From the IMG/VR virus record IMGVR_UViG_3300042907_001080, positions 186,001 to 250,000 of that record: a stretch of DNA of 64,000 bases, one strand, 5' to 3'. The translations under genes were made by a program, and so were the position numbers. The first letter of the stretch is position 1. Every line of letters begins with the position of its first letter. The notes under the pieces are model-generated. The model had not been told where the DNA came from. It was given only the letters and a program-made list of their open reading frames with translations, and made no database searches. Shown piece after piece: positions 30,361 to 62,942 of the stretch.

Positions 30361-30364
30361 CTAG

Positions 30365-30652
30365 ATGTTTCTCACAATCAAAACTCAGCAAAATCAATAC
30401 TCTAGACTCAGTAAACACGGAGTCGAACATCAATATAAGAGAAAAAAGACCGTAGCAGTATTGAGATGTGACGCCTGTGATTCAATATTTGAAAGAGATC
30501 TCAAACATATAGATAAGAAACGCCTCAGCAACAATTTCTTTCATTGTTGCGGGTCTTGTGATGCCAAAAGATTTGCTCAACGCAAGGGGATTGAGCAGAA
30601 GCAGATATGGAACATGCCTGCTAGTTTAGACTTACCTGTGTCTAAATTCTAA
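30365..30652 (+). CDS. hypothetical protein with putative Zn-binding cysteines
   Basis: CDAC ... CCGSC. Confidence 0.65.
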   Translation: MFLTIKTQQNQYSRLSKHGVEHQYKRKKTVAVLRCDACDSIFERDLKHIDKKRLSNNFFHCCGSCDAKRFAQRKGIEQKQIWNMPASLDLPVSKF

Positions 30653-30968
30653 ATGATTCGCCGCAGCCGCAGCGATCTCGCTCATTGGGATTGATAAAAT
30701 CAAAGCCTTCATTGAGTCCATTGCGGACCCAATCCATGGTCAACCCGTTTAAATAGGCTAGACTTTTGGCATCAACCAGCACAACAAACCCGTCGTGTGC
30801 AAAATTAGTTACTCCTACTTCAGATTCGTAACTGTCCACGTATTCTAACACATAGGCTAGCCCACTGCACCCTGTGGTTCTAACACCTATGCGAATGCCT
30901 ACACCTTTACCTCGGCGTTCTAAATTCTGTTTAATCTTTTTAGCCGCTGTGTCGGTTACGGTAATCAT
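30642..30968 (-). CDS. iscA: Fe-S cluster assembly A-type carrier IscA
   Basis: GVRTTGCSGLAY, F.NPN..RCGCGESF. Confidence 0.95.
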   Translation of the reverse strand: MITVTDTAAKKIKQNLERRGKGVGIRIGVRTTGCSGLAYVLEYVDSYESEVGVTNFAHDGFVVLVDAKSLAYLNGLTMDWVRNGLNEGFDFINPNERDRCGCGESFRI

Positions 30969-31326
30969 CTACGGCCGCCTTGATAGCATCTTCTGCAAGG
31001 ATACTACAATGTATCTTTACTGGTGGTAGAGCTAGTTCTTCTGCTATTTCTTTGTTTTTGATTGTTCCGGCTTGGTCGAGGGTTTTGCCTTTGAGCCACT
31101 CTGTGACAAGGCTCGAACTCGCGATAGCCGATCCGCAGCCATACGTTTTAAATTTTGCATCTGTAATAATACCTGTATCATGATCTACCTTTATTTGTAG
31201 TTTCATTACGTCACCGCAAGCAGGAGCACCGACCATACCAGTGCCCACTGTGGGATCATCTTTGGCAAATGATCCTACATTACGTGGGTTTTCGTAATGA
31301 TCAATTACTTTGTCCGAGTACGCCAT
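30940..31326 (-). CDS. iscU: Fe-S cluster scaffold IscU
   Basis: MAYSDKVIDHYENPRNVG, GAPACGDVM, YGCGSAIASSS, LPPVKIHCS. Confidence 0.97.
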   Translation of the reverse strand: MAYSDKVIDHYENPRNVGSFAKDDPTVGTGMVGAPACGDVMKLQIKVDHDTGIITDAKFKTYGCGSAIASSSLVTEWLKGKTLDQAGTIKNKEIAEELALPPVKIHCSILAEDAIKAAVDDYRNRHSG

Positions 31327-31858
31327 TGATTATTCTCCAGTTTATTATCTTCCATATATTAGACAAATAGCTTTTTTTATCTGCCTGATAGTCCAATGCC
31401 CATGCATGTTCCCACCAATCTACTAATAGCACAATGTCGTTCTTGATTTCGTGATTCACAATGGTTTTGATCTTGCCATCCCGAGCCAAGTATACCCATC
31501 CGCTGCCCTGTATCTTCATGGCTGTTTTTTCAAATTCTTCTTTGAACCGGTCAAAAGTATCAAAGTGTTTTTCTATAAACTGTAAAATAGCATCATAGGG
31601 TCTATTAGATCCTTCTGGTTTTTGTAGTTGACCAAAATAGATACTGTGTAAAAATGCGCCAGCTTCGTTGAAATCGTCATCACCTTCGCCCTTGTTGTAG
31701 CGATCAACATAGGCTTTGTATAATGTTCCGTAGTGATAATCTATGGTTTCTTTGGATTTCACGGGATCGAGATCTTCGCGATCGTATGGCAGTGTCAACT
31801 GTATGAGTTTGTCTTTTTTGCCTTCAACAATGAACTTTTGAATGAAATTGTATGCCAT
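31301..31858 (-). CDS. Fe/Mn superoxide dismutase (compact, divergent)
   Basis: LPY...L.P, YHYG, FLHSIYF, GSGWVYL, DWWEHAW..DY; start revised to MAYNF. Confidence 0.88.
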   Translation of the reverse strand: MAYNFIQKFIVEGKKDKLIQLTLPYDREDLDPVKSKETIDYHYGTLYKAYVDRYNKGEGDDDFNEAGAFLHSIYFGQLQKPEGSNRPYDAILQFIEKHFDTFDRFKEEFEKTAMKIQGSGWVYLARDGKIKTIVNHEIKNDIVLLVDWWEHAWALDYQADKKSYLSNIWKIINWRIINGVLGQSN

Positions 31859-31863
31859 ACATG

Positions 31864-31880
31864 TATTTACCGCATAAATA
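31864..31880. promoter_or_regulatory. divergent TAAATA late-type promoter pair
   Basis: Minus-strand TAAATA 5 nt before the SOD ATG; plus-strand ATAAATA before the SD and ATG at 31901. Confidence 0.62.
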
Positions 31881-31900
31881 ACCGACAAGGAGATTTTAAT

Positions 31901-32140
31901 ATGCTAGGATTAATCAAGAAACTTTTTGGCAGTAAGCCAGCCGAACCTGTTGCAGTTCCCTACAAGGTAGAAACTCCACCAGTCGAAGTCGCACAACCTT
32001 CAGTCGAGCCAACAGCAGCAGAAGTTTCTGCTGAAAACAAAGCAGTGGCAGTGGCAAAAGCCAAACGAGCACCAGCGAAAAAAGCGCCTATTAAGAAAGT
32101 AGCAGCGCCGAAGACTCCGCGAAAGCCAAAGGCTCCGTAA
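31901..32140 (+). CDS. small protein with Ala/Lys/Pro-rich histone-H1-like tail
   Basis: AAGGAG SD; MLGLIKKLFG amphipathic N-terminus; KRAPAKKAPIKKVAAPKTPRKPKAP. Confidence 0.72.
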   Translation: MLGLIKKLFGSKPAEPVAVPYKVETPPVEVAQPSVEPTAAEVSAENKAVAVAKAKRAPAKKAPIKKVAAPKTPRKPKAP

Positions 32141-33161: not shown

Positions 33162-33167
33162 ACTATA

Positions 33168-44175: not shown

Positions 44176-45156
44176 ATGACACAAGACTTCACAAAGATAC
44201 CATTCCATAACATAACAAGATTTGGTCAACGCACCATGTTGCATCGCCCGTTATTTTCTACCAGTTGGATTTTGGGCCGTTTCTGTAATTATAACTGTTC
44301 TTACTGTTGGCCCTATGCTAGATCGGACAAGGTAGATCACCAGCCTTTAGAAGTATATACTAATACTGTAGATGAAATCAAACGACAGGCTCGACTAAAT
44401 GGCTTCAATGAATTCCATTGGAGTTTCAGTGGCGGTGAACCTACTGCTTACCGACAGCTACATGATTTGATTAAACACCTTGACGAAACAGAAAGCACAT
44501 ACCAAAGTATACACATGACAACCAATTTAAGTCCTGGAAGTAAATGGTGGAATACCTGGTGTGCCAACACAGCATTACTACAACGCAGAAGTATCACAGC
44601 ATCATTTCATGATGAGTTTGCTCGAGAGCAGGAATTCGGTGACAAGTGTCTACAGTTATTGCATGAGCGTGTGCATGTCACAGTCAATCAAGTAATGGTC
44701 CCGGAAAAGTTTTATGAGCTTTATGAACGCATGTCTCGGCTACATGCTCGTGGAATCAATGTTACGCTCAAACCGCAAAGTGATCCTACAGCGAGTCGTG
44801 TAGTCGATGGCTACACAACAGAAATGATTGATCTATTACAGACTGGATTTCCTCAAACATCACAAGGCGAAGACGTTTATCAAATAGCATTGTATGATAC
44901 AGACAACAAAGAATATTTGTTCGATCAAGCAGAAAGATTTAATGCTTTTGGTTTTAACAAATTCCAAGGTTGGAGTTGCAATAGTGGGTATCAAAGTGTT
45001 ATAATAAGAGGTAATGAAGTGAAACGATCATATAGCTGTCACGACCGACTATTAGGAACACTAGAGAGCTTTGAGCTTTTTAAAAAACCAACAGTTTGTA
45101 TAACACCTAGTTGTGTCAGCAGTGCTGATTCAAAGATACCAAAATGTATAAACTAG
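44176..45156 (+). CDS. radical SAM protein with C-terminal Cys-rich (twitch-like) domain
   Basis: CNYNCSYC, SGGEPT, TTN, C..G..SC...C...C. Confidence 0.92.
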   Translation: MTQDFTKIPFHNITRFGQRTMLHRPLFSTSWILGRFCNYNCSYCWPYARSDKVDHQPLEVYTNTVDEIKRQARLNGFNEFHWSFSGGEPTAYRQLHDLIKHLDETESTYQSIHMTTNLSPGSKWWNTWCANTALLQRRSITASFHDEFAREQEFGDKCLQLLHERVHVTVNQVMVPEKFYELYERMSRLHARGINVTLKPQSDPTASRVVDGYTTEMIDLLQTGFPQTSQGEDVYQIALYDTDNKEYLFDQAERFNAFGFNKFQGWSCNSGYQSVIIRGNEVKRSYSCHDRLLGTLESFELFKKPTVCITPSCVSSADSKIPKCIN

Positions 45157-46121
45157 AAAACATAAAAGACATACATCTAGAATTAACAAGTAAGTGTCAA
45201 GCACGATGCCCAATGTGTCCTCGCCGAGTTAACGGAGGGATACTAAATCCTATTATGTCGTTAAATGAGATAACACTAGAACAATTTAAAGAATGGTTCT
45301 CAGATGAATTTATAAATCAACTGGATAGTCTGTTTATGTGCGGCAATTTAGGTGATCCTATTATTGCTGAAGATTGTTTAGAGATATTTCAATACTTAAA
45401 AGAAACTAATCCTAACATACGATTGAGCATGCATACAAATGGTAGTGCTAGAAATATACACTGGTGGAAAAAATTAGCAAAGTATAAAGTTAAAGTTACA
45501 TTTGGAATAGACGGTTTAGAAGATACACACAAGTTATATCGAATAAGCACTAATTGGAACACCATTATAAAAAATGCCGAGTCATTTATAAAAGCTGGCG
45601 GCGAAGCAGAATGGCACATGTTAGTGTTTAAGCATAACGAACATCAAATTGAAGAATGCCGTGCGCTAAGTCACAAACTTGAATTTAAAAAATTCACAAC
45701 CAAGCATACTAGTCGTTTTAAAGATAACAAATTTCATGTATTGGACGAAACCGGCAAGACTGTTAATATTCTTTATCCTACTAAACTTAGCACTTCACAT
45801 ACAGTAAATGTGTTGTCAGTATTACCAGCAGAGATACAATGCAAGGCAAAGAAATATAGTCAACTATACATAAGTGCAGACGGAGGAGTTAGTCCGTGTT
45901 GCTGGTTGGATTTTTCCTGGCAGTTGCCTAACCAGGACAATAGAATAAATTATATGGATAAAATTGGAGTTTATCCTAACCTAAATAAACAGTCGTTAAT
46001 AGATATATTTAATTCTGGTTTCTTTAGTAAGATTGAAAGTACCTGGTCAGCCGTTCCTTTAATGGAATGCGGCAAACAATGTGGACATTTTGATAAGCTA
46101 GGAGAGCAATTTGTTAGTTGA
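45144..46121 (+). CDS. radical SAM/SPASM-twitch protein
   Basis: CQARCPMC, CGNLGDP, HTNG, FGIDG, VSPCC. Confidence 0.92.
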   Translation: MYKLENIKDIHLELTSKCQARCPMCPRRVNGGILNPIMSLNEITLEQFKEWFSDEFINQLDSLFMCGNLGDPIIAEDCLEIFQYLKETNPNIRLSMHTNGSARNIHWWKKLAKYKVKVTFGIDGLEDTHKLYRISTNWNTIIKNAESFIKAGGEAEWHMLVFKHNEHQIEECRALSHKLEFKKFTTKHTSRFKDNKFHVLDETGKTVNILYPTKLSTSHTVNVLSVLPAEIQCKAKKYSQLYISADGGVSPCCWLDFSWQLPNQDNRINYMDKIGVYPNLNKQSLIDIFNSGFFSKIESTWSAVPLMECGKQCGHFDKLGEQFVS

Positions 46122-46704
46122 TACAGAACACTTACATCACTGGATGCAAGCCATAAGACAAAGCCCAGATCCTATGAGGACCATGGATGCATTCTGGTCT
46201 GGACAACTTAAAAGCAAAGAATGGTTGATCTCAAATTTAAGAAAACACATTAATAAATTTGTAGGTATTGATATACATGGTGGCTGGGTTGGTGTACTAG
46301 CCAGTATGTTGTTCCAAAGTGATATCCCTATTATTAATATTCGTAGTGTTGATATTGACCCTACCTGCGAATCTATTGCAGTTAACATGAACAAGATTGA
46401 AGAAATGGTTGGCAAGTTTCGTGCTGTCACAGCAGACATGTGTGCTCTTCGCAGTGATGCAGATGTCATTATCAACACCAGTTGTGAACACATAACACAA
46501 GACCAATATGACATATGGTTAAGCGGAATGCCACATAGCAGCCTACTAGCATTGCAAAGCAATAATTATAATATAGATGAACATGTTAGGATTGCTAACA
46601 GTTTAGAAGAGTTTAAAAAACAATGCCATCTGGACAATATTTTGTATGCCGGGGAACTTGATTTGCCGTTGTACAAACGATTTATGATTATAGGAAAACA
46701 ATGA
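46111..46704 (+). CDS. class I SAM-dependent methyltransferase-like protein
   Basis: IHGGWVGVL, SVDIDP, INTSCEH. Confidence 0.75.
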   Translation: MLVDTEHLHHWMQAIRQSPDPMRTMDAFWSGQLKSKEWLISNLRKHINKFVGIDIHGGWVGVLASMLFQSDIPIINIRSVDIDPTCESIAVNMNKIEEMVGKFRAVTADMCALRSDADVIINTSCEHITQDQYDIWLSGMPHSSLLALQSNNYNIDEHVRIANSLEEFKKQCHLDNILYAGELDLPLYKRFMIIGKQ

Positions 46705-47435
46705 TAGAATTAGGGTTAGTTAAATGGTATAATGACGCAAAGAGATACGGGTTTATTAAAGCAGACTCGGATGGAGAATCTATTTTGGCACAGAGTCATT
46801 CTATTGTGGAAGAACCAAAGACTTTGAGAGAATTTCAACGTGTAACTTTTGAAAGATATGTAACTGATAATGGCCTAGAAGCACGTACTATAAATATCGC
46901 CATGAACCCAGATTTATCGATTTACGAACACGAAGTTATATCATTGAAAAAACAACGACTTCATCTTTCTTCATTTGTAGGACATGTCTTATTAGTGGTT
47001 AATACTGCCAGCCGATGCGGACTTACACCTCAGTACGAAGGATTAGAAAAATTATTTCAAAAATATAAAGATAAAAAATTTACAATCCTGGCATTTCCGA
47101 CAAACAATTTCGCAGGACAGGAGCCTAATACAAATGCCGAAATTTTAGATTTTTGTGAGACAAATTATAATGTAAGTTTTTATGTTATGGAAAAATCAAA
47201 TATTGTAGAACAGGATAGTTCAAGCCCTGCACAATTCGCCGAAACTGCACCTAGAGAAATAAATTCTTTTTATAAAGACCTTGCCACCAGAACAAATGTT
47301 TTACCGCAGTGGAATTTCCACAAGTATCTAATTAATCGTACGGGTTCTATTATTAAAAGTTTTGATCATTTGACTCAACCAGACAATGATGTATTAATTA
47401 ACGCAATCGAAGAATTTTTGGATAGTAACGTATGA
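46701..47435 (+). CDS. cold-shock domain / glutathione peroxidase fusion
   Basis: N-terminal GLVKWYNDAKRYGFI (CSD RNP1); C-terminal VNTASRCGLTPQY, AFPTNNF.GQEP, WNFHKYLI. Confidence 0.85.
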   Translation: MIELGLVKWYNDAKRYGFIKADSDGESILAQSHSIVEEPKTLREFQRVTFERYVTDNGLEARTINIAMNPDLSIYEHEVISLKKQRLHLSSFVGHVLLVVNTASRCGLTPQYEGLEKLFQKYKDKKFTILAFPTNNFAGQEPNTNAEILDFCETNYNVSFYVMEKSNIVEQDSSSPAQFAETAPREINSFYKDLATRTNVLPQWNFHKYLINRTGSIIKSFDHLTQPDNDVLINAIEEFLDSNV

Positions 47436-50824: not shown

Positions 50825-51025
50825 ATGATCAATGAAAAATACAGTAATGAAGATGTTCCTATTCAAGATACATTTTATATGCAAAAGTTTATGGAGATTC
50901 AACGTCAAAATGTTGTATTATCAAATAAACTACGAGACTTATATGAAATTCTTGAGATCCGTGATGTTGTAGAAATGCATTTTGGGGATAAGTTTTTTAA
51001 TATCTTAAATGATACACCTGCATGA
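50825..51025 (+). CDS. hypothetical protein
   Basis: 66-aa ORF ATGA-coupled to a radical SAM gene. Confidence 0.6.
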   Translation: MINEKYSNEDVPIQDTFYMQKFMEIQRQNVVLSNKLRDLYEILEIRDVVEMHFGDKFFNILNDTPA

Positions 51026-52422
51026 ATAAAATTAAACACTGGCAAGAGAAAATTGAATCAGTATCAGGAAGCAAAACTTTTTGCATATTGCCCTGGATAC
51101 ATTTTGCCACACGTCCCAACGGCGACATGCGACTATGTTGTAATGCTAACAGTAGTGGAGCAGGAACGGATCACGAAATTGGTCTAGTAAAAAACGAAAC
51201 AGGTCGTCCTGCTAATTTTGGACGGGAAACTCCTATGAGCGCATGGAACAACAAATACATGCGAGATGTACGTTTAACTATGCTAGAAGGAAAGATTCCT
51301 TCTAGCTGTAGTAAATGTATTGCTGAAGAGTCTAAAGGTGTTGCTAGCAAACGTATTTGGGAAACAGGTACTTGGATAGAAGAAGGTCTTGATGTTGAAG
51401 AGCTTGTTAAACAAACAGAAGAAAATGGAACAATTCCTGAACGTCTTGTTTATCTAGATTTAAGATTAGGACATACTTGTAATCTTAAGTGTGTTATGTG
51501 TAGTCCTCATGATAGTAGCATGTGGGTTTCTGATCATAAAAAGATATATCCTCTATTTCAGACTAAAGAACTTAAAGATCAAATGGCATGGGATCAATCA
51601 GAGTTTAACAATAAATGGCACGAAAATCCAGACTTCTGGAAAGAAATGTATACTCAGATTCCTAATCTAAAACAAGTATACTTTGCAGGCGGCGAACCTT
51701 TGCTTATTAAGGAGCATAAACTGTTCCTTGAAGAAATTGTTAGACAAGGATACGCGGACAAGATCCTTGTACGATACAACACAAATGGATTATTAGTAAA
51801 TGACGAAATTATTGAACTCTGGAAAAAATTCAAAAAAGTTAAAGTAGGGTTTAGCATCGATGCTGTCGGCGACCGTAATTACTATATACGCTATCCTAGT
51901 GATTGGGTTACTATCGAACGTAATCTTCACAAGTTAGATAACACTCCTGGCAACATACAAGTTAGCATTGCCACTGCTATACAAATACTAAACATCAAAC
52001 ACTTGCCTGAACTTGCCAAGTGGAAGATACAACAGAATTTTAAGAAAGTAAACTTTGAAAATATAACTGGTGGAATTGAAGCCGGCGGCGGAATTGTTAA
52101 CATGCACTTGTTGTATATACCCACGTTCTTAAGTATTAGATGTTTGCCTGAATATGATAAAGAACAAGTGCGTAAGAGCTTTGCTGATCTTGCTACATGG
52201 TTGTATACTAACTACAGACAAGATGAAGACTTTTGGAAAAACAATCCTTACGGATGGAAACGCTGGCAGGCAGTATTAGACTTTATGGATGCCGAAGATC
52301 ACACTGCTCAGTTACCTGCATTTGTTGAATATATTGAAAAGATAGAAGCTATACGTGATACAGATTTTGTTAAGACTTTTCCTGAGCTAGCACATTTGCT
52401 ACAGTCCCCAATCTTATCTTAG
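51022..52422 (+). CDS. radical SAM protein with N-terminal twitch domain
   Basis: FCILPW..RLCC..CSKC; CNLKCVMC; FAGGEP; YNTNG; FSID. Confidence 0.93.
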   Translation: MNKIKHWQEKIESVSGSKTFCILPWIHFATRPNGDMRLCCNANSSGAGTDHEIGLVKNETGRPANFGRETPMSAWNNKYMRDVRLTMLEGKIPSSCSKCIAEESKGVASKRIWETGTWIEEGLDVEELVKQTEENGTIPERLVYLDLRLGHTCNLKCVMCSPHDSSMWVSDHKKIYPLFQTKELKDQMAWDQSEFNNKWHENPDFWKEMYTQIPNLKQVYFAGGEPLLIKEHKLFLEEIVRQGYADKILVRYNTNGLLVNDEIIELWKKFKKVKVGFSIDAVGDRNYYIRYPSDWVTIERNLHKLDNTPGNIQVSIATAIQILNIKHLPELAKWKIQQNFKKVNFENITGGIEAGGGIVNMHLLYIPTFLSIRCLPEYDKEQVRKSFADLATWLYTNYRQDEDFWKNNPYGWKRWQAVLDFMDAEDHTAQLPAFVEYIEKIEAIRDTDFVKTFPELAHLLQSPILS

Positions 52423-53464
52423 GATTTTTAAAAATAGGATCAGCAAGCATTTTCTGAAACTCTGCGTATTCAGGATGAGTTGTCTTCCAAATGGTGCGCT
52501 GTTCATACGTGGTCTTATCCCAAGTATTCCAATCAATAACCAATTGAAAATCTACACTATAGAAATTTGGAAATCTGTCCAGGACTAATTGTGCGTAATC
52601 TTTCATTTCTTTGTAGTTTAGATCTTGAACCACATATTGTGTTAGGACATAGATATTAGGATTATTAGATATCTCATTGTTTATATAATCACAATTGTCT
52701 AACAATGTTGGCCAGTGTCCTCCACGGCGAACAACATCATATGTTTCTTCACGAGCTGCATCAAAGCTGATGCGTATAGCTCTAATTTTACTGTGCCATT
52801 TAGATATTCTGCGCCAATACGCAGGTGTAAGCATTACGCCGTTTGTCTGTAAGTCTAATATTAAATTGGGCCAAGGTGTTGGATCAAAGTTAACTAAAAA
52901 GTCTCGGAATATCTTAGAACCAAACGGATCACCACTGCCAGTGATATCTAGTGTAATATGTTTGTCATGCGGTTTGTCAAATACAGCATTAATAATTTTG
53001 TAGTGTAATTCTAGTTTACGTTCGTAATCAACACCTTCGTAATCGTATATCTTTTCAGTGCGACAACTAGGACAAGTTAAATTACAACTAGCATCGTTCT
53101 CAAACATAATATGTGTTGGAAATTCTGCTGGCTTAGGTGTATCTTCTATGTTGGGTAATCGATTGTCAGATATGTCGCCGCACACTGTATGATTACAATA
53201 CCTAAAACTTCCATCTAGTATAGACTCACGAATTATAGTTGCTACTTCCCCGTGCCATATTTCTTCAAACGATTGTTCATTTAAATTACCAATACTATAA
53301 GGCAACCAGCTTGTGCAGCACATCCAACAACTACCATCGTCCCTAATAGACAACGTTTCAAAAGGTTTATTACAAAATTTGCCTTGTAAATTTTTTTGTT
53401 TAACTTTAAGATTAGCTAAATCATGCCCGCTATCTATTTTAAGCATTATAGTTTTATTTTTCAT
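52370..53464 (-). CDS. radical SAM protein with N-terminal SPASM/twitch domain
   Basis: FCNKPF..WMCC..IGNL..EEIW; CNLTCPSC; GSGDPF; QTNG. Confidence 0.92.
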   Translation of the reverse strand: MKNKTIMLKIDSGHDLANLKVKQKNLQGKFCNKPFETLSIRDDGSCWMCCTSWLPYSIGNLNEQSFEEIWHGEVATIIRESILDGSFRYCNHTVCGDISDNRLPNIEDTPKPAEFPTHIMFENDASCNLTCPSCRTEKIYDYEGVDYERKLELHYKIINAVFDKPHDKHITLDITGSGDPFGSKIFRDFLVNFDPTPWPNLILDLQTNGVMLTPAYWRRISKWHSKIRAIRISFDAAREETYDVVRRGGHWPTLLDNCDYINNEISNNPNIYVLTQYVVQDLNYKEMKDYAQLVLDRFPNFYSVDFQLVIDWNTWDKTTYEQRTIWKTTHPEYAEFQKMLADPIFKNPKIRLGTVANVLAQEKS

Positions 53465-54560
53465 ATATAGGAATTATAGTTGTTGCTTTCCACAGGTCTT
53501 CAAAGTCTGTGAACTCTTTGGCTTTAGGCACACACATACCACATCCGCATCTTTGGTTAGGGCAAATAATTGGCGTTACCGGTTTAGATAACATATCTTT
53601 AACTTGCGAGATAATAGTTTCAGTATCTCGCAAATTTCCAATAGGACCCCGGCCTGTGTGTGTTGCCTGACATGTTTGATGATGGAACACATTGCCTGTA
53701 TGCTGCTCAACATGCATAAAAAACCAGTTAACTGTGCAATACCAGTCTTTAAACCAGTTGTTCACTAATTTGATATCTTGCCATTCATCTTCAACTTTAC
53801 CCTGTGTGCATCTGCTACCACAACATGCACGACCTACGTTTGTACCCTCGGCAGATGTAGATGCACTACGAGGTTGCCCCATCCATTCAAAGAACCAGTT
53901 CTGTTGTTCTTCTGTGTATTCGTGGCTTGTTCTACGTTGATTGCCGTCGGCATCTTGAAACCATCCCTTTCGAACAATATTTCCATCTCCGATTGGCACA
54001 GGATTCAGTCGTGAAATTCCTTTAGATTTGAGTAGATTACATACTTCAACCGCCTCGTCAAAATAGTCGCAATGTAGCATTACATTTGCCTGAACACTCA
54101 TCCCGGCATCATGCAGGCCTATAATATTTTTAATGCTTCTATCTTTTAATTTCTGATCAGCTTCACTATGCCAACTAACAGTAACGTGAACAAAATTATC
54201 TAAAATTCTTTTAGTAAATTGAGGCCCCCAAGAGCCGTTAGTAGTCAACCCTAACGCAAAATTTCCTTGTGTTTTTATATATTCTATCAATGGCCAAAAA
54301 TTAGGATTGGCGGTAGGTTCGCCACCGGTAAAATCTATGCTGGTTATATCACCATATAGTCTTTTTGAATTGTACAGATCTGCATAGCTCTTGATAAAAT
54401 CAAAAGTAGTTTTTAATTCTTCAAAGCTAGGATACGGACTATAGTTGTTATGACGTGTACTTTCACAGTAAGAACAGTCGTAATTACATCTGCGTAACAT
54501 TTCCCAGGTTACAATAAATGGTGTGGGATTTTTTAATTTAATTGCTGTTGTTTTTATCAT
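53454..54560 (-). CDS. radical SAM protein with Cys-rich C-terminus
   Basis: CNYDCSYC, TGGEPT, TTNG, CC..RC, C...RCGCGMC. Confidence 0.92.
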   Translation of the reverse strand: MIKTTAIKLKNPTPFIVTWEMLRRCNYDCSYCESTRHNNYSPYPSFEELKTTFDFIKSYADLYNSKRLYGDITSIDFTGGEPTANPNFWPLIEYIKTQGNFALGLTTNGSWGPQFTKRILDNFVHVTVSWHSEADQKLKDRSIKNIIGLHDAGMSVQANVMLHCDYFDEAVEVCNLLKSKGISRLNPVPIGDGNIVRKGWFQDADGNQRRTSHEYTEEQQNWFFEWMGQPRSASTSAEGTNVGRACCGSRCTQGKVEDEWQDIKLVNNWFKDWYCTVNWFFMHVEQHTGNVFHHQTCQATHTGRGPIGNLRDTETIISQVKDMLSKPVTPIICPNQRCGCGMCVPKAKEFTDFEDLWKATTIIPIYEK

Positions 54561-55450
54561 TGTTTTATCTTTGTTAACGGAATGTCTGCTGCGCAGGTGC
54601 AGTAATTCCTATCGCATATAATAGGGTTTATAGGTATTGAAAATGTACCTGCATATATGTTACCAAGACTACCACCGACTCTACAAGTCGCTCGGTGCAC
54701 ATCGCCGTCCCAATTTATCATTAGGCTTTCTATGCCTGCGTTGCAAGTCCAGCCCTTGAATTTGTTTAGATGCAATTTTATTACGTCGTTGGCATGCATA
54801 ATTTCTACATCGTCTATTCTACAGTTAGCCTTTGCCGTGGCATTCTGTGAGAGAATCCATTCTAAGTCGTTACCATCATACCGCATATCGTCAAACACAT
54901 TATGATCGCCCTCAGTCCAGCGTATTCTACGCACAGCAAATCTAATCCCTTTTTCTCGGAACTCTTTGACTACTTTGCGAACACTGTCCATATGATCGTA
55001 GTGAGCCATTATGTTAACAAAAAAGTCTGTTTGAGTTTTGTCATAGAACTCGTTAATTGTTCTCATCACACGCTGCCAGTCATATTCAAAATGCAGACTA
55101 AACACTAGGTGATTAAAATACATTTCGTTTTGCAAATACCAGTTAGCAGATCGAGTTCCGTTGGTTGTTAAGTTGACCCAGAATATATCCTTGCGTTTAA
55201 AGTAGTCTAGTAGATCTTCTATATCGGGATGCACACAAGGTTCGCCACCTGTTAAACTAATACGTAACGGTTTTCCAATTTCGCATAGTTTATCAACAGT
55301 TGTTTCTAGGATGTTAATATCTGTATGCGAACTAAAATTATCATGTATGCTTGAAGGGCAATATGTACAGTCGTAGTTGCAACGTTTGCCTAAATTCCAT
55401 TCAACTTTTATTTGATCTTGATGCGGCCAAGAACTGGTTATTTTATACAT
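54557..55450 (-). CDS. radical SAM/twitch protein
   Basis: CNYDCTYC, TGGEP, TTNG, CNAG..ATC..LGNI..C...CTC. Confidence 0.92.
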   Translation of the reverse strand: MYKITSSWPHQDQIKVEWNLGKRCNYDCTYCPSSIHDNFSSHTDINILETTVDKLCEIGKPLRISLTGGEPCVHPDIEDLLDYFKRKDIFWVNLTTNGTRSANWYLQNEMYFNHLVFSLHFEYDWQRVMRTINEFYDKTQTDFFVNIMAHYDHMDSVRKVVKEFREKGIRFAVRRIRWTEGDHNVFDDMRYDGNDLEWILSQNATAKANCRIDDVEIMHANDVIKLHLNKFKGWTCNAGIESLMINWDGDVHRATCRVGGSLGNIYAGTFSIPINPIICDRNYCTCAADIPLTKIKQ

Positions 55451-56690
55451 ACTGTTTAAATTCTGGTATAACTGCTAACAAATCTTGATTGCGAGTAGAG
55501 TCTAATGCAAAATTAAAATCTAAAAAGTCTTGCCACAAATTATTTTGATCCTTTGCTTGTAGATAGTTAATGTTATCTTGTATTTGTTGATGCGTAACTG
55601 TGCCTAACAGCGGGTTCTTTTTAACTGCGCTCCATGTATCTACTTGTGACTTAACTGCTAGAAGTTTTGTAATTGCTAGTGCTTTTAATTCTTGTGGTAA
55701 CACTTGTGCTGACAGACAGTTGGGATAACTAACACGGTGGCTATAAAATATAATGTCCATGGTGTTAATAAAATAATCAATACATTCTGCGGCTTGTAGT
55801 ATGTTGCCAGCTTGTGCTGTAAATGCCCCAACTACACGACTCACGTTAGGAATTTTTTTTATTTCTTTAATGTTTGCTTCAACTTGATTAAAGTCGCTGT
55901 TACCGCGAATGTAATTGTAAACATCGTGAATGCCATCAAGGCTGACATTAACGGCAATGCTTCTAAAATATGGCCAGTAGTCATGTATAGTCCTTCCTTT
56001 GCTAATTCCTAGCGTTGTGCCATTTGTGGCGTATTTTAATTCAATGTTAGCACCATAAGGCTTTAACATGTCTAAAATTTTATAATGTTGAGGATCCATT
56101 AGAGGCTCTCCACCTGCAAACTCTACTCGTCTAAAATGAGGTAGAAGTTTTTCAAAACTGGTCCACCAGTTGTCGCTATCGTCAAACTCTCCGATATACT
56201 TTCCGGGATTATCTACAAGCTCTGTAATAGTGTGTACTAGGAAATTATTTTCTTTCTTATAGAACGGAGTTACTTTGTCCCAGTCTTTCCAGTTAGTGCT
56301 ATCTAACGGATTACACATGCGACACTTCAAGTTACACAAGTTGTTAAGTTTAATCTCCATTGTAGGAAATTCAAACGGCATAATTTCTTGTAGCGGTGTA
56401 TCGGGATATAAGTTAATACGTGCTTCTGGAATAACTCCGTTAATATGACGTTGGCGCAAACTTTCTACACCCTGGTCTTCTAAGTCAAAGCAAGGTTTAC
56501 AAACCTCAGGCCGTTCTCCGCATAAGACTTGTTTGCGAACAAGTTGCATGGTTTCATTATTCCATATTTCTTCTAGTGTATTATTTTGTATGAACCCAAC
56601 CGGCGCACTACGACAACAGACTTTGACGGCTCCGTCTTCGCGTGTTGCTAACCCTGTAAAAGGGTGCATACAAAATGTTTTACTTTGCAT
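55443..56690 (-). CDS. radical SAM protein with N-terminal twitch domain
   Basis: FCMHPF..VCC..CKPC; CNLKCRMC; FAGGEP; ATNG; start revised. Confidence 0.93.
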   Translation of the reverse strand: MQSKTFCMHPFTGLATREDGAVKVCCRSAPVGFIQNNTLEEIWNNETMQLVRKQVLCGERPEVCKPCFDLEDQGVESLRQRHINGVIPEARINLYPDTPLQEIMPFEFPTMEIKLNNLCNLKCRMCNPLDSTNWKDWDKVTPFYKKENNFLVHTITELVDNPGKYIGEFDDSDNWWTSFEKLLPHFRRVEFAGGEPLMDPQHYKILDMLKPYGANIELKYATNGTTLGISKGRTIHDYWPYFRSIAVNVSLDGIHDVYNYIRGNSDFNQVEANIKEIKKIPNVSRVVGAFTAQAGNILQAAECIDYFINTMDIIFYSHRVSYPNCLSAQVLPQELKALAITKLLAVKSQVDTWSAVKKNPLLGTVTHQQIQDNINYLQAKDQNNLWQDFLDFNFALDSTRNQDLLAVIPEFKQYV

Positions 56691-57288
56691 TGATAATATT
56701 GTAAAGTTTTTTGGCCGCAATGCTATGTGCTATTGGGCCGGGATGGTTATTGTCGGACGCTAAATCTTCTGTATTCAAAATGTTATCACGTAACGCATTA
56801 TTGATAAATTTGGGAATACTACCAAAGTATTCGCCAATGGTGACATCAATTACTCGATCTATCAACATCTCCGGTTTCGGTGGAGCCCAAAAAGGATAAT
56901 AACGGAGTCCTAAACTATTAATATATAATTCTGCATGATTAATATAGATACCTGACCTAACATTGTTGTCGTAATTAGAATGAACCTCAGACCATTTCTT
57001 AAACAATTCGTCGTCCTGCCACGGTCCTATTTTTTTGTTCTTTTCTACTATATTAAAAATTACATCTCTATGAGAATAGGTCCAACCCACTACAACCAAG
57101 TCATCTTTCTTAAACCTAAACGACAAGATACGGGATAGTATCTCTAGATTACTACTACCCGGATCTCCGTTATTAATAGTTGTTCTGCCAGTTAATTTTC
57201 CTAACACTGCCGGCCATGATTGACTAGACGGATCATCTAATGCTAATCCAAGGGTAAATGAACAACCGAATGTTATAAGTCTTGACAT
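56680..57288 (-). CDS. SGNH/GDSL-like hydrolase or acyltransferase
   Basis: FGCSFT, G.SN, D..HPG. Confidence 0.68.
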   Translation of the reverse strand: MSRLITFGCSFTLGLALDDPSSQSWPAVLGKLTGRTTINNGDPGSSNLEILSRILSFRFKKDDLVVVGWTYSHRDVIFNIVEKNKKIGPWQDDELFKKWSEVHSNYDNNVRSGIYINHAELYINSLGLRYYPFWAPPKPEMLIDRVIDVTIGEYFGSIPKFINNALRDNILNTEDLASDNNHPGPIAHSIAAKKLYNIINAK

Positions 57289-57986
57289 GATATTGCCCAT
57301 TGTCTTTCTTTACACCAAAAGCATTCGTTACAAACTGGAACGTATTGACCCGGTATATAGTTTTTATAATCAATGCCTACTATCTCGCCTTCACAACTGC
57401 GGGTAATTTCAAACAGATCCGTGAGGCCAAGCTCACTATACATTTTAACAATTTCTGACTTGTCTGTGAAGCGGAATGGATGATAAACCATAAAGCCCAT
57501 GTGTTCCATTTCTGCCAAATGCTTGTTGTCCTCTGTAGGGTCAATGTCACGTTCACTCATACCATTGAATTGTGCTAATCTTGGGTTACGGGTTACTCCG
57601 TTGTAAAACGCATCTATGTTATATTTCTTACAAATATACTCTGCGTAAGCTCTTGCTTGAATGTTGTCACCGCTCACTTGCTTACCATACTCGTCGGTTA
57701 AGTTTGGTCCTACATTGCCGTACTCTAAATCGGGCGCAATAAAGTTAATATGCCGTTTAAATGTTGTATGATAGAAATTTTGAAATAACCATTTACACAC
57801 AGTATCTGCATTGTCTTGTTGCCAAGGTTTGGTTTTCCAGCAACGTATATGATTAATGATATGTATAGTTATATTATGTTCTTTGGCTTTTTGGCAAACC
57901 ATATAGGCAAGTAATGCGCTATCGGCACCGCCACTAACGGCAATGGCAATGTTTTTCCATTTTGGATTGAAGGGTACCTTGAACAT
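57273..57986 (-). CDS. QueC-like PP-loop adenine nucleotide alpha-hydrolase
   Basis: VSGGADS, HPF...KSEIV, TRSC...CNECFWCKER; start revised to MFKVPF. Confidence 0.75.
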   Translation of the reverse strand: MFKVPFNPKWKNIAIAVSGGADSALLAYMVCQKAKEHNITIHIINHIRCWKTKPWQQDNADTVCKWLFQNFYHTTFKRHINFIAPDLEYGNVGPNLTDEYGKQVSGDNIQARAYAEYICKKYNIDAFYNGVTRNPRLAQFNGMSERDIDPTEDNKHLAEMEHMGFMVYHPFRFTDKSEIVKMYSELGLTDLFEITRSCEGEIVGIDYKNYIPGQYVPVCNECFWCKERQWAISCQDL

Positions 57987-57991
57987 GGATA

Positions 57992-58022
57992 TATTTACAC
58001 GAGTTATACTAGCACATAAATA
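57992..58022. promoter_or_regulatory. divergent TAAATA late-type promoter pair
   Basis: TAAATA 5 nt and 4 nt before the two divergent ATGs (57986 and 58027). Confidence 0.65.
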
Positions 58023-60972: not shown

Positions 60973-61788
60973 ATGATTAGAGGAATTGGCGGCAAGCCTT
61001 ACATTAATTTAGATCCATTTTTGGATGTAAAAGGGTTTACAGAGTTACATCCAGAAATCTGTAAAGGTTTTGCTTTAGCAAGGGATTATGCCAAAGAAGG
61101 CACATGGATGGCTCCAGGCTTTGATCAAAGTCGAGGCAGTTATCAGTGGAACTGGAAACCGATATACAAAGCACATGAAGAATATCTTGCCTTGTCGAAT
61201 GATCATCCCATTAAAATTCAAGGTCAAGAAATATATCCTACAGATTTTAAAGACTACAAACAACGCAATTTATTCACACGTTATCTTAAAAGTGTATTAG
61301 GTGCTAACGATCCTTATACCTATTATTTTCTATGGAACGAAGGCGACTGGAATGAACGCAATGCTGAAAGACAAAAGACTGAGGAAAGCAACTTCTTTCC
61401 CGGTGTTGTTCAGTGGGTAGAAAATCTACAAGAACAAGGTATAATAGATCGCATAGGGCGTGTTATATTTTTTCTTTGCGATCATAACGGCAAAGCATTT
61501 GAACATCGAGACCTAGATGCTAAAAACGGTGTGTTTGAAAATGATTACTATACTCCGCATAATAACGAATTCATACATATAAGATATCGCACCAAGCGAG
61601 GTTTCTATATATGGGATCCCGACACACAAGACAAACACTATATTAATAGCCATGCTGCTATGTGGAACGATCAAGACTGGCACGGTGGGGAATCTAGCCT
61701 AGAACAAGAATACGGACTTAGAATTGACTGTAAGTTTACACAAGAATTCCGTAAACAAATTGGAATAGATCATTTAGAGAATTATTAA
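60973..61788 (+). CDS. putative 2OG-Fe(II) oxygenase (Asp-hydroxylase-like)
   Basis: GRVIFF..EHRD (HxD) ... WND.DWHGG....GLRID. Confidence 0.62.
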   Translation: MIRGIGGKPYINLDPFLDVKGFTELHPEICKGFALARDYAKEGTWMAPGFDQSRGSYQWNWKPIYKAHEEYLALSNDHPIKIQGQEIYPTDFKDYKQRNLFTRYLKSVLGANDPYTYYFLWNEGDWNERNAERQKTEESNFFPGVVQWVENLQEQGIIDRIGRVIFFLCDHNGKAFEHRDLDAKNGVFENDYYTPHNNEFIHIRYRTKRGFYIWDPDTQDKHYINSHAAMWNDQDWHGGESSLEQEYGLRIDCKFTQEFRKQIGIDHLENY

Positions 61789-62942
61789 TGTCTAATACAT
61801 ATTGCCCACTAGCCTGGATTGGCAGAAACATTTTACCTACTAGCATTCAACCTTGTTGTGAATGGTACGGTATTGGAGACCCGGTTGACAGTGCAGAAAA
61901 TATCGGACATAGTCCTGTATTTTTAAATGCTCGAGAAAAAATGAGTAAAGGAGAAAAAGTAGCCGGTTGTAAACAATGTTACTTAGCAGAAGAATCTGGT
62001 ATTAAATCTAGACGGCTACAGGCATTGGAACAATATGGGGTTGTAGATACTGTTGAAAGTAGAGTATTAGATGTTAGTTTTGACAATATATGTAACTTAA
62101 AATGTAGAGGATGTGCTTCGTCGAGCAGTCATCTTTGGTTTTCAGATGAAAAAGAAATATACAGTCACACTATTTTTGGTTCAAAATATGTTGAAAATAA
62201 TACTAATATAGATATTTCAGGATTGGAGTATGTCGGAGTTAGTGGAGGCGAACCGTTTTTAAGTAAAAAGTTTAACTCGTTTGCGGAAAAACTATTATCG
62301 ACACAAACGGCAAAAAATATATGTTTAACAATTAATACTAATGCAACTGTTAAACCTTCTCCTGCGGTATATGATCTAATTTTAACATGTAAAAATTTAA
62401 GTTTACAATTTAGCATAGACGGTATTGGGCACTTAAATTCTTATTTTAGAAGTGGCGCAACGTTTGAAGAATGTGAGAAAAATTTAAATTTCTTTAGAAA
62501 TCTAAAGACTCTAAGACAAGAAAAATCTACAAGTTTGGTCATACATACTACTGTTAGTTTATACAATGTAAATCTTCTTAAAGATATGGAAGACTACTTT
62601 CAAACAAATTATCCCGAATATGCGCTTACACATAGAAACTTATATTGGCCACCTCAACTATCAATTAGAAATCTTCCCCAACCGTATAAAGAAATTTTAA
62701 TTCCGATTGTTGAAAATTTTGGGGATAACTATAAAGATGTTTTATACGAATTAATATTAAATGAGCAGGATTATTTTAACCATTTTTTAAATTTTCATGT
62801 CAAGTTAGATTTATTAAGAAAAGAAAGTTTAAAAGATAGTAATCCATTGTTATCTGAATTTATAAAAAACTATCCTAGAGAATTAATAGATAGTAAAATC
62901 TTTTTTATTGAGCAAATGGATAAACTAAAATGCGGCACATAG
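61788..62942 (+). CDS. radical SAM protein with N-terminal twitch domain
   Basis: YCPLAW..QPCC..CKQC; CNLKCRGC; SGGEPF; NTN; FSIDG. Confidence 0.92.
   Translation: MSNTYCPLAWIGRNILPTSIQPCCEWYGIGDPVDSAENIGHSPVFLNAREKMSKGEKVAGCKQCYLAEESGIKSRRLQALEQYGVVDTVESRVLDVSFDNICNLKCRGCASSSSHLWFSDEKEIYSHTIFGSKYVENNTNIDISGLEYVGVSGGEPFLSKKFNSFAEKLLSTQTAKNICLTINTNATVKPSPAVYDLILTCKNLSLQFSIDGIGHLNSYFRSGATFEECEKNLNFFRNLKTLRQEKSTSLVIHTTVSLYNVNLLKDMEDYFQTNYPEYALTHRNLYWPPQLSIRNLPQPYKEILIPIVENFGDNYKDVLYELILNEQDYFNHFLNFHVKLDLLRKESLKDSNPLLSEFIKNYPRELIDSKIFFIEQMDKLKCGT

What the first reader, a model, noticed from the sequence alone, without database searches (positions are those of the whole stretch)
30642..31858. 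SOD-iscU-iscA operon as a possible Fe-S supply and protection unit for the radical SAM arsenal
Seen: three overlapping genes under one late-type promoter, with intact IscU (three Cys, LPPVK) and IscA motifs. Established: radical SAM/SPASM enzymes need multiple superoxide-sensitive [4Fe-4S] clusters. Inference: these genes, plus the peroxidase inside the cluster, provision and protect at least 9 multi-cluster enzymes. IscU looks proteobacterial, hinting at the host group.
Basis: partly seen in the sequence, partly recalled or inferred. Interest (0 to 1): 0.62.

Follow-up and report, generated by a model that had tools for sequence, protein, structure and literature searches.

The report
Phage late operon: SOD, IscU, IscA
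A giant lake-water phage carries a three-gene operon (a small superoxide dismutase plus the iron-sulfur scaffold IscU and carrier IscA) under a structural-gene-type promoter, and it probably helps load iron-sulfur clusters into the phage's 18 radical SAM enzymes, an idea already published for marine phages.

Summary
On the minus strand, sod (31301-31858), iscU (30940-31326) and iscA (30642-30968) overlap by 26 and 29 nt. They follow one T4-late-type box, GTAAATA, placed 5 nt before the sod ATG. All catalytic residues are intact.

The window comes from a 282-kb lake-water jumbo myovirus related to Pseudomonas phage PA5oct. The phage encodes 19 radical SAM-domain proteins, 18 of them with CX3CX2C. 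No IscS, ferredoxin, HscA or glutaredoxin was found in the 282-kb record (about 80% complete), so the operon must plug into a host ISC pathway.

The same box heads structural genes, a four-gene radical SAM operon and the peroxidase, so co-timing is plausible at motif level.

- The SOD is an old jumbo-phage gene. PA5oct and a Vibrio phage have it without isc genes or radical SAM genes.
- iscU-iscA often occurs without SOD, under other promoters, and in a phage with a single radical SAM gene.
- Published work shows radical SAM enzymes resist superoxide.
- Nishimura et al. 2017 already linked viral IscU and A-type carriers to viral radical SAM genes.

IscU is proteobacterial. Burkholderiales is favoured as donor, but the class is not resolved. 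Verdict: a new variant of a known kind, of moderate interest.

The parts
31864..31870 (-). Late-type promoter box GTAAATA (core of the T4 box TATAAATA). A 5-nt spacer (CATGT, 31863..31859) follows, then the sod ATG.
   Evidence: Sequence read. Motif enrichment and spacing statistics. The same box and spacing precede structural genes. Box and spacing are kept in most of 48 distinct SOD-bearing viral loci, including SODs only 46-58% identical, while the spacer letters vary. The T4 box lies at -13..-6 (PMC1524935), which puts the A of the ATG at about +1; the leaderless reading is inferred.
31301..31858 (-). sod: a compact Fe/Mn-family superoxide dismutase, 185 aa.
   Evidence: Pfam Sod_Fe_N and Sod_Fe_C. 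Alignment to solved SODs. In a 32-sequence family alignment, ligands H42, D147 and H151 are invariant and H71 is at least 90% conserved. AlphaFold2 model pLDDT 87.8; Foldseek top hits are all Fe/Mn SODs with TM 0.80-0.84. There is a gap of about 18 residues in the N-domain hairpin, and His30 is replaced by Leu. No NCBIfam equivalog cut-off is reached.
30940..31326 (-). iscU: Fe-S cluster scaffold, 128 aa. A GGAG sits 10 nt before its ATG, inside the 3' end of sod.
   Evidence: NifU_N 2.5e-54. Full-length alignment to H. influenzae and E. coli IscU with Cys37, Asp39, Cys63, LPPVK, His105 and Cys106. At least 597 viral stretches encode relatives.
30642..30968 (-). iscA: A-type Fe-S carrier, 108 aa.
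   Evidence: Fe-S_biosyn 5.6e-17. Alignment to E. coli IscA at 4e-34 with Cys35 (GCSG) and CGCG. It lies directly downstream of iscU, as in 78 of 80 cellular isc loci, where the two genes are 13-280 nt apart and do not overlap.
30574..30597 (-). Terminator-like hairpin plus T-rich tail, 45 nt past the iscA stop; a possible end of the operon.
   Evidence: Consensus scan only, so weak.
30365..30652 (+). Convergent 95-aa Cys-rich ORF (CxxC...CCxxC). It overlaps the iscA 3' end by 11 nt and has its own box, GTAAATA-CTAG-ATG. It is a conserved neighbour of unknown function.
   Evidence: Present in 96 related loci. No Pfam hit.
31874..32140 (+). Divergent unit: box ATAAATA (31874-31880), AAGGAG, then a 79-aa Lys/Ala/Pro-rich ORF (31901-32140). 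It shares the intergenic region with sod.
52370..57998 (-). Putative client operon: box GTAAATA (57998..57992), TATCC, ATG 57986. It encodes a PP-loop/QueC-like gene, a 206-aa ORF and four radical SAM genes (55443-56720, 54557-55450, 53454-54560, 52370-53464).
44176..46121 (+). Two radical SAM genes: 44176-45156, and 45144-46121 with a SPASM domain. Upstream is TTAAATAC 9 nt before the ATG, a variant box.
46701..47435 (+). Cold-shock domain plus glutathione peroxidase ORF. An internal box ATAAATA (46890-46896), TCGCC and ATG 46902 sit at the domain boundary.
   Evidence: NTASRCG and WNF are kept.
51022..52422 (+). Radical SAM gene with an N-terminal twitch domain.
   Evidence: NF033640 at 406.8 bits against a cut-off of 170. 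CX3CX2C present.
61788..64000 (+). Two more radical SAM genes: 61788-62942 (N-twitch type) and 63396 onward, which runs off the window.

Best explanation
sod-iscU-iscA is a late-expressed auxiliary metabolic operon of a lake-water jumbo myovirus. RNA polymerase directed to the T4-late-type box GTAAATA probably starts at or next to the sod AUG, giving a leaderless mRNA. iscU and iscA are then translated by coupling, from start codons that lie inside the preceding gene. IscU (scaffold) and IscA (A-type carrier) are fully ISC-type and need the host's IscS for sulfur, ferredoxin for electrons and HscA/HscB, which dock on LPPVK. They add scaffold and carrier capacity at the time the phage makes its own Fe-S proteins, above all 18 radical SAM enzymes, several with auxiliary clusters. 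The compact Fe/Mn SOD made from the same transcript lowers superoxide. That would protect clusters being built on the ISC machinery and other solvent-exposed clusters, rather than the radical SAM clusters as such. Shown: gene identities, intact residues, overlap, the shared box and its link to structural genes, absence of the other ISC components, and the radical SAM census. Inferred: the transcription start, late timing, co-transcription, use of host partners, and radical SAM enzymes as the main clients.
For: Gene identity and residues. Overlaps and lack of internal terminators. Box enrichment, spacing and link to tail tube, adaptor and baseplate genes; the T4 box lies at -13..-6 (PMC1524935). 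Box and spacing conserved across SODs down to 46% identity. No IscS, Fer2, Hsp70 or glutaredoxin in the 282-kb record. 19 radical SAM-domain ORFs, 18 with CX3CX2C, and twitch/SPASM domains. The same box heads a four-gene radical SAM operon and the peroxidase. Related fragments carrying the isc locus hold up to 12 radical SAM genes. Complete cultured relatives without isc hold 0-4. 77 of 80 SOD-seeded viral loci have iscU directly downstream, and the 3 exceptions carry an ErpA-like A-type carrier nearby. Precedent: marine T4-like viral genomes with IscU or an A-type carrier plus up to 12 radical SAM genes (PMC5332604), and a Baikal virus with an Fe-S assembly gene plus a viral ferredoxin (PMC7678222).
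Against: There is no expression or biochemical data. Metatranscriptome contigs gave only fragments at 90-99% likeness, partly from relatives or cellular iscU. SOD homologues occur without isc and without radical SAM genes in PA5oct and Vibrio phage 2.275.O. iscU-iscA lacks SOD in 53 of 79 IscU-seeded loci and sits behind sigma-70-like promoters in some lineages. SOD adjacency needs at least 17 changes on the poorly resolved IscU+IscA tree. C48C1 has IscU with one radical SAM gene; a 132-kb and a 72-kb IscU-bearing fragment have none. Viperin and HemN resist superoxide and peroxide (PMC9576991). The record is about 80% complete, so missing ISC partners could lie in the unseen part.
Confidence: 0.55

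Rival explanations
1. General Fe-S upkeep, not a radical SAM service. The phage supplies IscU and IscA to keep host Fe-S enzymes (respiration, TCA cycle, nucleotide and cofactor synthesis) working after host gene expression collapses. The radical SAM genes are incidental beneficiaries.
For: IscU is very widespread in viral contigs (at least 597 stretches) in many genomic contexts and with different promoter types. IscU occurs in C48C1 with a single radical SAM gene, and in 72-kb and 132-kb fragments with none. Earlier virome work treats iscU and sufA as general auxiliary metabolic genes (PMC5332604).
Against: In this genome the box is of the late, structural-gene type rather than early. The genome holds an unusual 18-19 radical SAM genes, while isc-free complete relatives hold 0-4.
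Confidence: 0.25
2. The SOD is functionally independent of the isc genes. It is an ancestral jumbo-phage SOD, possibly virion-associated or a general late-phase antioxidant. iscU-iscA was inserted behind its promoter and merely shares transcription.
For: Homologues at 39-41% identity in PA5oct-like phages and Vibrio phage 2.275.O lie beside S21 and ClpS-like genes with no isc genes nearby. PA5oct gp223 carries the record's 'ESI-MS/MS' note, the same note carried by other proteins in that record that the paper counts among 93 virion-associated proteins (PMC7318152). The operon lies next to the tail-fibre module. SOD adjacency is patchy on the IscU+IscA tree. iscU-iscA keeps the cellular gene order, as expected for a block transfer.
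Against: 77 of 80 SOD-seeded loci keep iscU directly downstream, including SODs only 46-58% identical. When iscUA is missing, another A-type carrier sits nearby. That persistence suggests selection for the pairing.
Confidence: 0.3
3. Takeover rather than supply. Phage IscU and IscA compete with the host proteins for IscS, HscA and iron, diverting or shutting down host Fe-S assembly.
For: Only scaffold and carrier are encoded, and both must bind host partners. LPPVK is retained.
Against: Every cluster-binding residue is conserved and under strong purifying selection across hundreds of viral copies at 84-100% identity. A decoy would be expected to lose them. The phage's own 18 radical SAM enzymes need working assembly.
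Confidence: 0.05

Closest known systems
Viral Fe-S assembly auxiliary metabolic genes (IscU and A-type carriers) in marine T4-like environmental viral genomes (Nishimura et al. 2017, mSphere, PMC5332604)
   Same: The virus encodes IscU and/or an A-type carrier without a desulfurase. The same genomes hold many radical SAM genes (up to 12). The authors draw the same conclusion, that the assembly proteins serve viral as well as host Fe-S proteins. Their IscU is also of proteobacterial type.
   Different: Here the setting is a freshwater jumbo (at least 282-kb) PA5oct-related lineage with 18-19 radical SAM genes. iscU and iscA are fused into one overlapping operon with a superoxide dismutase behind a late-type, apparently leaderless promoter. 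Nearest cellular hits are mostly Burkholderiales rather than SAR86 or other gamma lineages.
Proteobacterial iscRSUA-hscBA-fdx operon (E. coli and H. influenzae IscU; E. coli IscA)
   Same: The gene order iscU then iscA. IscU aligns full-length with solved IscU, and IscA at 4e-34 with E. coli IscA. All cluster ligands and the HscA-binding LPPVK are present.
   Different: Only two of the eight genes are present. No IscS, Fdx or HscA was found in the phage record; IscR and HscB were not searched for. The genes overlap by 29 nt instead of being 13-280 nt apart. A sod gene sits upstream and the promoter is a phage late-type box.
Fe/Mn SOD of jumbo phages (PA5oct gp223, annotated sodB in MIJ3 and Callisto; Vibrio phage 2.275.O NVP2275O_049)
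   Same: About 180-190 aa, 39-41% identical, in the same wider clade of T4-superfamily jumbo myoviruses (portal 47-51% identical).
   Different: In those phages the gene lies among S21 and ClpS-like genes with no isc genes, and their genomes have no radical SAM hit.
T4 late promoter TATAAATA (-13..-6), read by gp55, gp33 and gp45
   Same: The core TAAATA. It is associated with structural genes, and its distance to the ATG fits a start about 6 nt past the box (PMC1524935).
   Different: The first two positions are relaxed (A/G at the position before TAAATA). About a quarter of the copies sit 4-6 nt from the ATG with no room for a Shine-Dalgarno sequence. Transcription starts were not mapped, and gp55, gp33 and gp45 homologues were not searched for.

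Membership tests
IscU-type Fe-S scaffold (Pfam NifU_N, PF01592) | Profile match above the curated cut-off over the full length | tested here: met
   183.2 bits against a cut-off of 22, covering residues 2-126 of 128. E about 1e-64 to solved IscU structures.
IscU-type Fe-S scaffold (Pfam NifU_N, PF01592) | Three cluster-ligand cysteines (Cys37, Cys63, Cys106), Asp39, His105 and the HscA-binding LPPVK motif | tested here: met
   All are aligned with E. coli and H. influenzae IscU: GAPACGDV, YGCGSA, LPPVKIHCS.
IscU-type Fe-S scaffold (Pfam NifU_N, PF01592) | Assembles and transfers clusters together with IscS, Fdx and HscBA | not testable with these tools
   This needs biochemistry or complementation.
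A-type Fe-S carrier (IscA/SufA/ErpA; Pfam PF01521) | Profile match above the cut-off, plus the three conserved cysteines (Cys35 and C-x-C at the C-terminus) | tested here: met
   62.4 bits against a cut-off of 26.3. GCSG and CGCGESF align with E. coli IscA.
Fe/Mn superoxide dismutase (Pfam PF00081 + PF02777) | Both domains matched above the cut-offs | tested here: met
   Sod_Fe_C 82.6 bits against 20.9. Sod_Fe_N 38.7 bits against 27, but covering only profile positions 6-42 of 82.
Fe/Mn superoxide dismutase (Pfam PF00081 + PF02777) | Four metal ligands (His26, His73/81, Asp156/167, His160/171) and the gateway Tyr34 | tested here: met
   H42, H71, D147, H151 and Y50 are present. They are invariant or at least 90% conserved in 32 family members.
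Fe/Mn superoxide dismutase (Pfam PF00081 + PF02777) | Two-domain SOD fold | tested here: met
   AlphaFold2 pLDDT 87.8; Foldseek TM 0.80-0.84 to many Fe and Mn SODs. The N-terminal hairpin is shortened by about 18 residues.
Fe/Mn superoxide dismutase (Pfam PF00081 + PF02777) | Membership of a named FeSOD or MnSOD equivalog, and metal specificity | tested here: not met
   The best NCBIfam hit scores 83.8 bits against a cut-off of 348. The gene is a divergent family member; metal and activity are unknown.
Complete ISC Fe-S assembly system | Cysteine desulfurase IscS, ferredoxin and the HscA chaperone encoded alongside | tested here: not met
   No PF00266 or PF00012 hit and no significant PF00111 hit in the 282-kb record. 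The record is about 80% complete.
T4-type late promoter | A TATAAATA-like box upstream of late (structural) genes, enriched over chance | tested here: met
   About 20-fold enrichment. 21 of 75 copies lie 4-6 nt before an ORF start, against 0-14 of 106-308 for control heptamers. It heads tail tube, adaptor and baseplate genes.
T4-type late promoter | Late-phase transcription start about 6 nt past the box, dependent on a gp55-type sigma factor | not tested
   No transcription start data exist. RNA runs were held only as contigs. gp55, gp33 and gp45 homologues were not searched for.
Viral Fe-S auxiliary genes that co-occur with viral radical SAM genes | isc genes and an enlarged radical SAM set in the same viral genome | tested here: met
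   19 PF04055 hits, 18 with CX3CX2C, in the same record.
Viral Fe-S auxiliary genes that co-occur with viral radical SAM genes | A statistical association across independent genomes | tested here: inconclusive
   isc-positive: 19 here, fragments 0-12, C48C1 1. isc-negative complete relatives: 0, 0, 1, 1, 4. The genomes are few, related to one another and mostly fragments.

The most novel reading that the evidence does not exclude
In a widespread lineage of lake jumbo phages, a phage-specific compact SOD has been recruited as a dedicated guard of a phage-run Fe-S assembly line. SOD, IscU and IscA are made from one leaderless late mRNA, in step with leaderless late operons for 18 radical SAM enzymes and a peroxidase. 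Together they form a self-contained 'build and protect' module for oxygen-labile cofactors, which lets an aerobic-water phage run extensive radical chemistry, probably on virion or DNA components, late in infection.
Probability: 0.2. Interest if true: 0.6.

Novelty: new variant of a known kind. Interest (0 to 1): 0.4.

Why it matters
Phage-encoded Fe-S scaffolds are known from viromes, but nobody has shown what they are for. This lineage is abundant and persistent: near-identical DNA was found in 14 lake-water runs, and hundreds of related contigs exist. It pairs the scaffold and carrier with an antioxidant enzyme and an exceptional set of radical SAM genes under one promoter type. That makes it a good system for testing whether viral isc genes feed viral enzymes. 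The promoter geometry also points to widespread leaderless late mRNAs in a T4-superfamily jumbo phage, which can be checked directly by 5'-end mapping.

Tried and rejected
- Megablast of the locus against 50,697 phage records found nothing. Several tblastn hits labelled 'phage' (Acinetobacter phage MD-2021a, Salmonella, Listeria and Staphylococcus records) look like bacterial contigs and were not used as viral evidence.
- Rfam found nothing in 29500-33500.
- Four lake metatranscriptome runs were laid on 29800-33300. They are held only as contigs. Fragments at 90-99% likeness cover parts of all genes, partly from relatives or cellular iscU. They show no starts, strand or co-transcription, so they are inconclusive.
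- Within-clade co-occurrence was tried through 13 large portal-bearing contigs (54-160 kb). Only one reaches an iscU, so the test is uninformative.
- Donor class: the free tree puts the viral clade next to Comamonadaceae-rich Burkholderiales, but an AU test does not reject a virus-plus-Gammaproteobacteria grouping (p 0.277). 'Betaproteobacterial' stays a lead, not a result.
- The SPASM hit lying N-terminal of the radical SAM core looked odd. It is the known N-terminal twitch subfamily NF033640.
- The TTG start at 31888 for sod was rejected in favour of ATG 31858, which fits the conserved box-to-ATG geometry.
- No complex prediction was run.
- A 'Synechococcus' MAG contig with an 85% IscU is almost identical to a Hydrogenophaga sequence in the tree. 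It is probably mis-binned and gives no cyanobacterial link.
Full report
**What is there.** The window is bases 186001-250000 of a 281,658-bp IMG/VR virus record, linear and about 80% complete by CheckV.
- an SOD-like gene, 31301-31858 (185 aa from the ATG);
- iscU, 30940-31326 (128 aa);
- iscA, 30642-30968 (108 aa).

They overlap by 26 and 29 nt. Pfam assigns Sod_Fe_N plus Sod_Fe_C, NifU_N (2.5e-54) and Fe-S_biosyn (5.6e-17), all above the curated cut-offs.

**The proteins are intact.**
- IscU aligns end to end with solved H. influenzae and E. coli IscU. It keeps Cys37, Asp39, Cys63, LPPVK and His105-Cys106.
- IscA aligns with E. coli IscA at 4e-34 and keeps Cys35 and the C-terminal CGCG.
- The SOD is a short, divergent member of the Fe/Mn family. 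It reaches no NCBIfam equivalog cut-off, has a gap of about 18 residues in the N-terminal hairpin, and has Leu in place of His30. The four metal ligands and the gateway Tyr are present. They are invariant or at least 90% conserved in a 32-member family alignment.
- An AlphaFold2 model of the SOD (pLDDT 87.8) matches Fe and Mn SODs at TM 0.80-0.84.

**What kind of phage.**
- The portal protein is 47-51% identical to those of Pseudomonas phage PA5oct, Sinorhizobium phage Phosso, Serratia phage BF and Pectobacterium phage CBB. PHROGs identify a T4-type DNA polymerase, a tail sheath and a portal. This is a T4-superfamily jumbo myovirus.
- It carries 28 tRNA genes.
- Fourteen lake-water metagenome runs hold the locus at 98-100% of sampled words. 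Hundreds of IMG/VR contigs encode close relatives of IscU (at least 597), the SOD (240) and the portal (at least 593). The lineage is abundant in fresh water.

**The promoter claim.**
- Upstream of sod the minus strand reads CGGTAAATA-CATGT-ATG. Genome-wide, [A/G]TAAATA is about 20-fold enriched in the 60 nt before ORF starts.
- 21 of its 75 copies lie 4-6 nt before an ATG that opens an ORF of at least 50 codons. Control heptamers give 0-14 of 106-308 copies.
- Genes with the box include tail tube, head-tail adaptor, baseplate wedge, baseplate hub and fibre-like proteins.
- The T4 late box TATAAATA lies at -13..-6 (PMC1524935). A 5-nt spacer therefore puts the A of the ATG at +1. The sod message and about 20 others would then be leaderless; this is inferred, not mapped.
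- Box and spacing are kept in most of 48 distinct SOD-bearing loci, even where the SOD is only 46-58% identical and the spacer letters differ.
- No terminator-like site interrupts the three genes on their strand. One follows iscA.
- iscU has a GGAG 10 nt before its ATG, inside sod. One late transcription unit with coupled translation is the best reading.

**Clients and partners.**
- The genome has 19 PF04055 hits, and 18 of those ORFs carry CX3CX2C. Nine lie in the window.
- Five of the nine show SPASM or twitch domains. Three are bona fide N-terminal-twitch radical SAM proteins, NF033640. One gene outside the window has a weak B12-binding domain hit, below the curated cut-off.
- No cysteine desulfurase, Hsp70 or glutaredoxin was found, and only a sub-threshold Fer2 fragment interrupted by stop codons. 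The phage therefore supplies only scaffold and carrier and must use a host ISC pathway.
- The same box with 5-nt spacing heads the minus-strand operon that starts at 57986 (a PP-loop gene plus four radical SAM genes). It also heads an internal start at 46902, exactly at the boundary between the cold-shock and glutathione-peroxidase domains.
- The plus-strand radical SAM block at 44176 has the variant TTAAATAC 9 nt before its ATG.

**How tight is the unit?**
- Among the 80 best SOD-seeded viral loci, 77 have iscU directly downstream. The three exceptions have lost iscU-iscA but carry an ErpA-like A-type carrier about 300 nt further on.
- Among the IscU-seeded loci, only 26 of 79 have SOD upstream. 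The others place iscU in many contexts: some behind their own late box, some behind sigma-70-like TTGACA..TATAAT promoters.
- On an IscU+IscA tree the SOD state needs at least 17 changes, although the tree is poorly resolved.
- SOD homologues in PA5oct-like phages (41%) and Vibrio phage 2.275.O (39%) lie beside S21 and ClpS-like genes, with no isc genes.
- PA5oct gp223 carries the record's 'ESI-MS/MS' note, so it may be among that phage's 93 virion-associated proteins (PMC7318152).
- The SOD thus looks like an old jumbo-phage gene that became linked to isc in this lineage. It is not a part that defines the Fe-S function.

**Co-occurrence with radical SAM genes**.

| Genome or contig | isc genes | PF04055 hits |
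|---|---|---|
| This phage (282 kb) | yes | 19 |
| Related fragment, 86 kb | yes | 12 |
| Related fragment, 40 kb | yes | 9 |
| Related fragments, 34 and 50 kb | yes | 6 each |
| Related fragments, 72 and 132 kb | yes | 0 |
| C48C1 (complete, 156 kb) | IscU | 1 |
| PA5oct | no | 0 |
| Vibrio phage 2.275.O | no | 0 |
| Serratia phage BF | no | 1 |
| Pectobacterium phage CBB | no | 1 (below cut-off) |
| Sinorhizobium phage Phosso | no | 4 |

The direction fits the hypothesis. The sample is small, the genomes are related to one another and most are fragments, so I call the test inconclusive.

**Origin of the isc genes.**
- The 80 best cellular IscU matches (81-87% identity) are overwhelmingly Burkholderiales: Limnohabitans, Rhodoferax, Polaromonas, Hydrogenophaga and Paraburkholderia. 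A few are Gammaproteobacteria.
- 78 of the 80 have iscA directly downstream, separated by 13-280 nt. IscA identity is 55-65% for most Betaproteobacteria against 52-59% for the gamma sequences.
- In an IscU+IscA tree all 84 viral rows fall on one side of a branch (SH-aLRT 88), which is compatible with one old acquisition.
- An AU test does not reject grouping the viruses with the gamma sequences (p 0.277).
- 'Proteobacterial' is supported. 'Betaproteobacterial host' remains only a lead.

**Literature.**
- Nishimura et al. 2017 (PMC5332604) described marine viral genomes with IscU and/or A-type carriers. One is a 183-kb T4-like genome with 12 radical SAM genes. They concluded that the viral assembly proteins serve viral Fe-S proteins.
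- A Lake Baikal virome study made a similar link for a viral ferredoxin (PMC7678222).
- Rohaun and Imlay 2022 (PMC9576991) found viperin and HemN resistant to superoxide and peroxide in vitro, and radical SAM-dependent pathways unaffected in stressed E. coli.
- From general knowledge of E. coli, the ISC assembly machinery and dehydratase-type clusters are the oxidant-sensitive targets. That is where a co-expressed SOD would most plausibly help.

**Verdict.** The locus is best described as a late, probably leaderless SOD-IscU-IscA auxiliary operon that boosts host-dependent Fe-S assembly while the phage makes its many Fe-S enzymes. It is a new variant (SOD-linked, freshwater, jumbo phage) of an already published kind of viral auxiliary function. 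Interest is moderate.

Noticed in passing
whole genome; in the window: 30354-30367 (+), 31856-31870 (-), 34789-34803 (-), 46890-46904 (+), 57984-57998 (-), 58016-58029 (+): About a quarter of all [A/G]TAAATA boxes (21 of 75) sit 4-6 nt before an ATG with no room for a Shine-Dalgarno sequence. With the T4 box geometry (-13..-6), this predicts many leaderless late mRNAs in a T4-superfamily jumbo phage. A second class has the box 20-36 nt upstream together with a GGAG or AGGA.
   Followed up: partly
window 46701-47435 (+), internal ATG 46902: The cold-shock-domain/glutathione-peroxidase 'fusion' has a perfect late box (ATAAATA-TCGCC-ATG) at the domain boundary. A peroxidase-only protein of 177 aa may therefore be made late, separately from the full-length form. 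The catalytic Cys (NTASRCG) and WNF are kept; the usual FPCNQF motif reads FPTNNF.
   Followed up: partly
L123:10001-11208 (also L122 and L126): In three close relatives, iscU-iscA is missing after sod. A different ErpA-like A-type carrier (107 aa, GGGCSG...SCGCG) sits about 300 nt beyond the Cys-rich ORF, so one Fe-S carrier has been replaced by another.
   Followed up: partly
window 30365-30652 (+): A conserved 95-aa Cys-rich ORF (CDAC...CCGSC) is convergent with iscA and overlaps its 3' end by 11 nt. It has its own late box, is present in 96 related loci and has no Pfam hit.
   Followed up: no
window 31901-32140 (+): A divergent 79-aa Lys/Ala/Pro-rich ORF sits behind a late box and AAGGAG. 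In some relatives the same position holds a small protein with an N-terminal hydrophobic stretch and a K/A-rich tail.
   Followed up: no
window 51022-52422, 55443-56720, 61788-62942: In these radical SAM proteins the SPASM-like Pfam hit lies N-terminal of the radical SAM core. They belong to the known N-terminal twitch subfamily NF033640 (217-407 bits against a cut-off of 170).
   Followed up: yes
loci L045, L047, L049, L056, L060, L062, L063, L067 (upstream of iscU): In more distant viral lineages, iscU is preceded by sigma-70-like TTGACA-17-TATAAT promoters instead of a late box. The timing of viral iscU expression probably differs between lineages.
   Followed up: partly
window 33946-34806 (-): The KDO-8-phosphate synthase gene (DAHP_synth_1) more likely starts at ATG 34791, behind GGTAAATA-ATTAT, than at the TTG at 34806. 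Together with UvdE (32091-33161), it is conserved next to the sod operon in dozens of related loci.
   Followed up: partly
L254 (CALRUK020000005.1, a 264-kb contig in a 'Synechococcus sp. UW140' MAG): Its iscU-iscA is almost identical to a Hydrogenophaga sequence in the tree. The contig is probably mis-binned betaproteobacterial DNA.
   Followed up: partly
phage collection records CAKLQH02/CAKLQF02 ('Acinetobacter phage MD-2021a'), OR85xxxx and OR84xxxx 'phage' records: Several records labelled as phages carry cellular-type iscU-iscA, erpA and sodB on contigs up to 305 kb. They look like bacterial sequence and inflate apparent phage hits for these genes.
   Followed up: no
genome 160512-160587 and 265947-272250 (outside the window): 28 tRNA genes, 27 of them in one 6-kb array.
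   Followed up: no
window 5250-30292 (-): A run of very large minus-strand ORFs (833, 975, 1393, 1625, 596 and 2485 aa), probably fibre or structural proteins, lies directly downstream of the sod-isc operon on the same strand.
   Followed up: no
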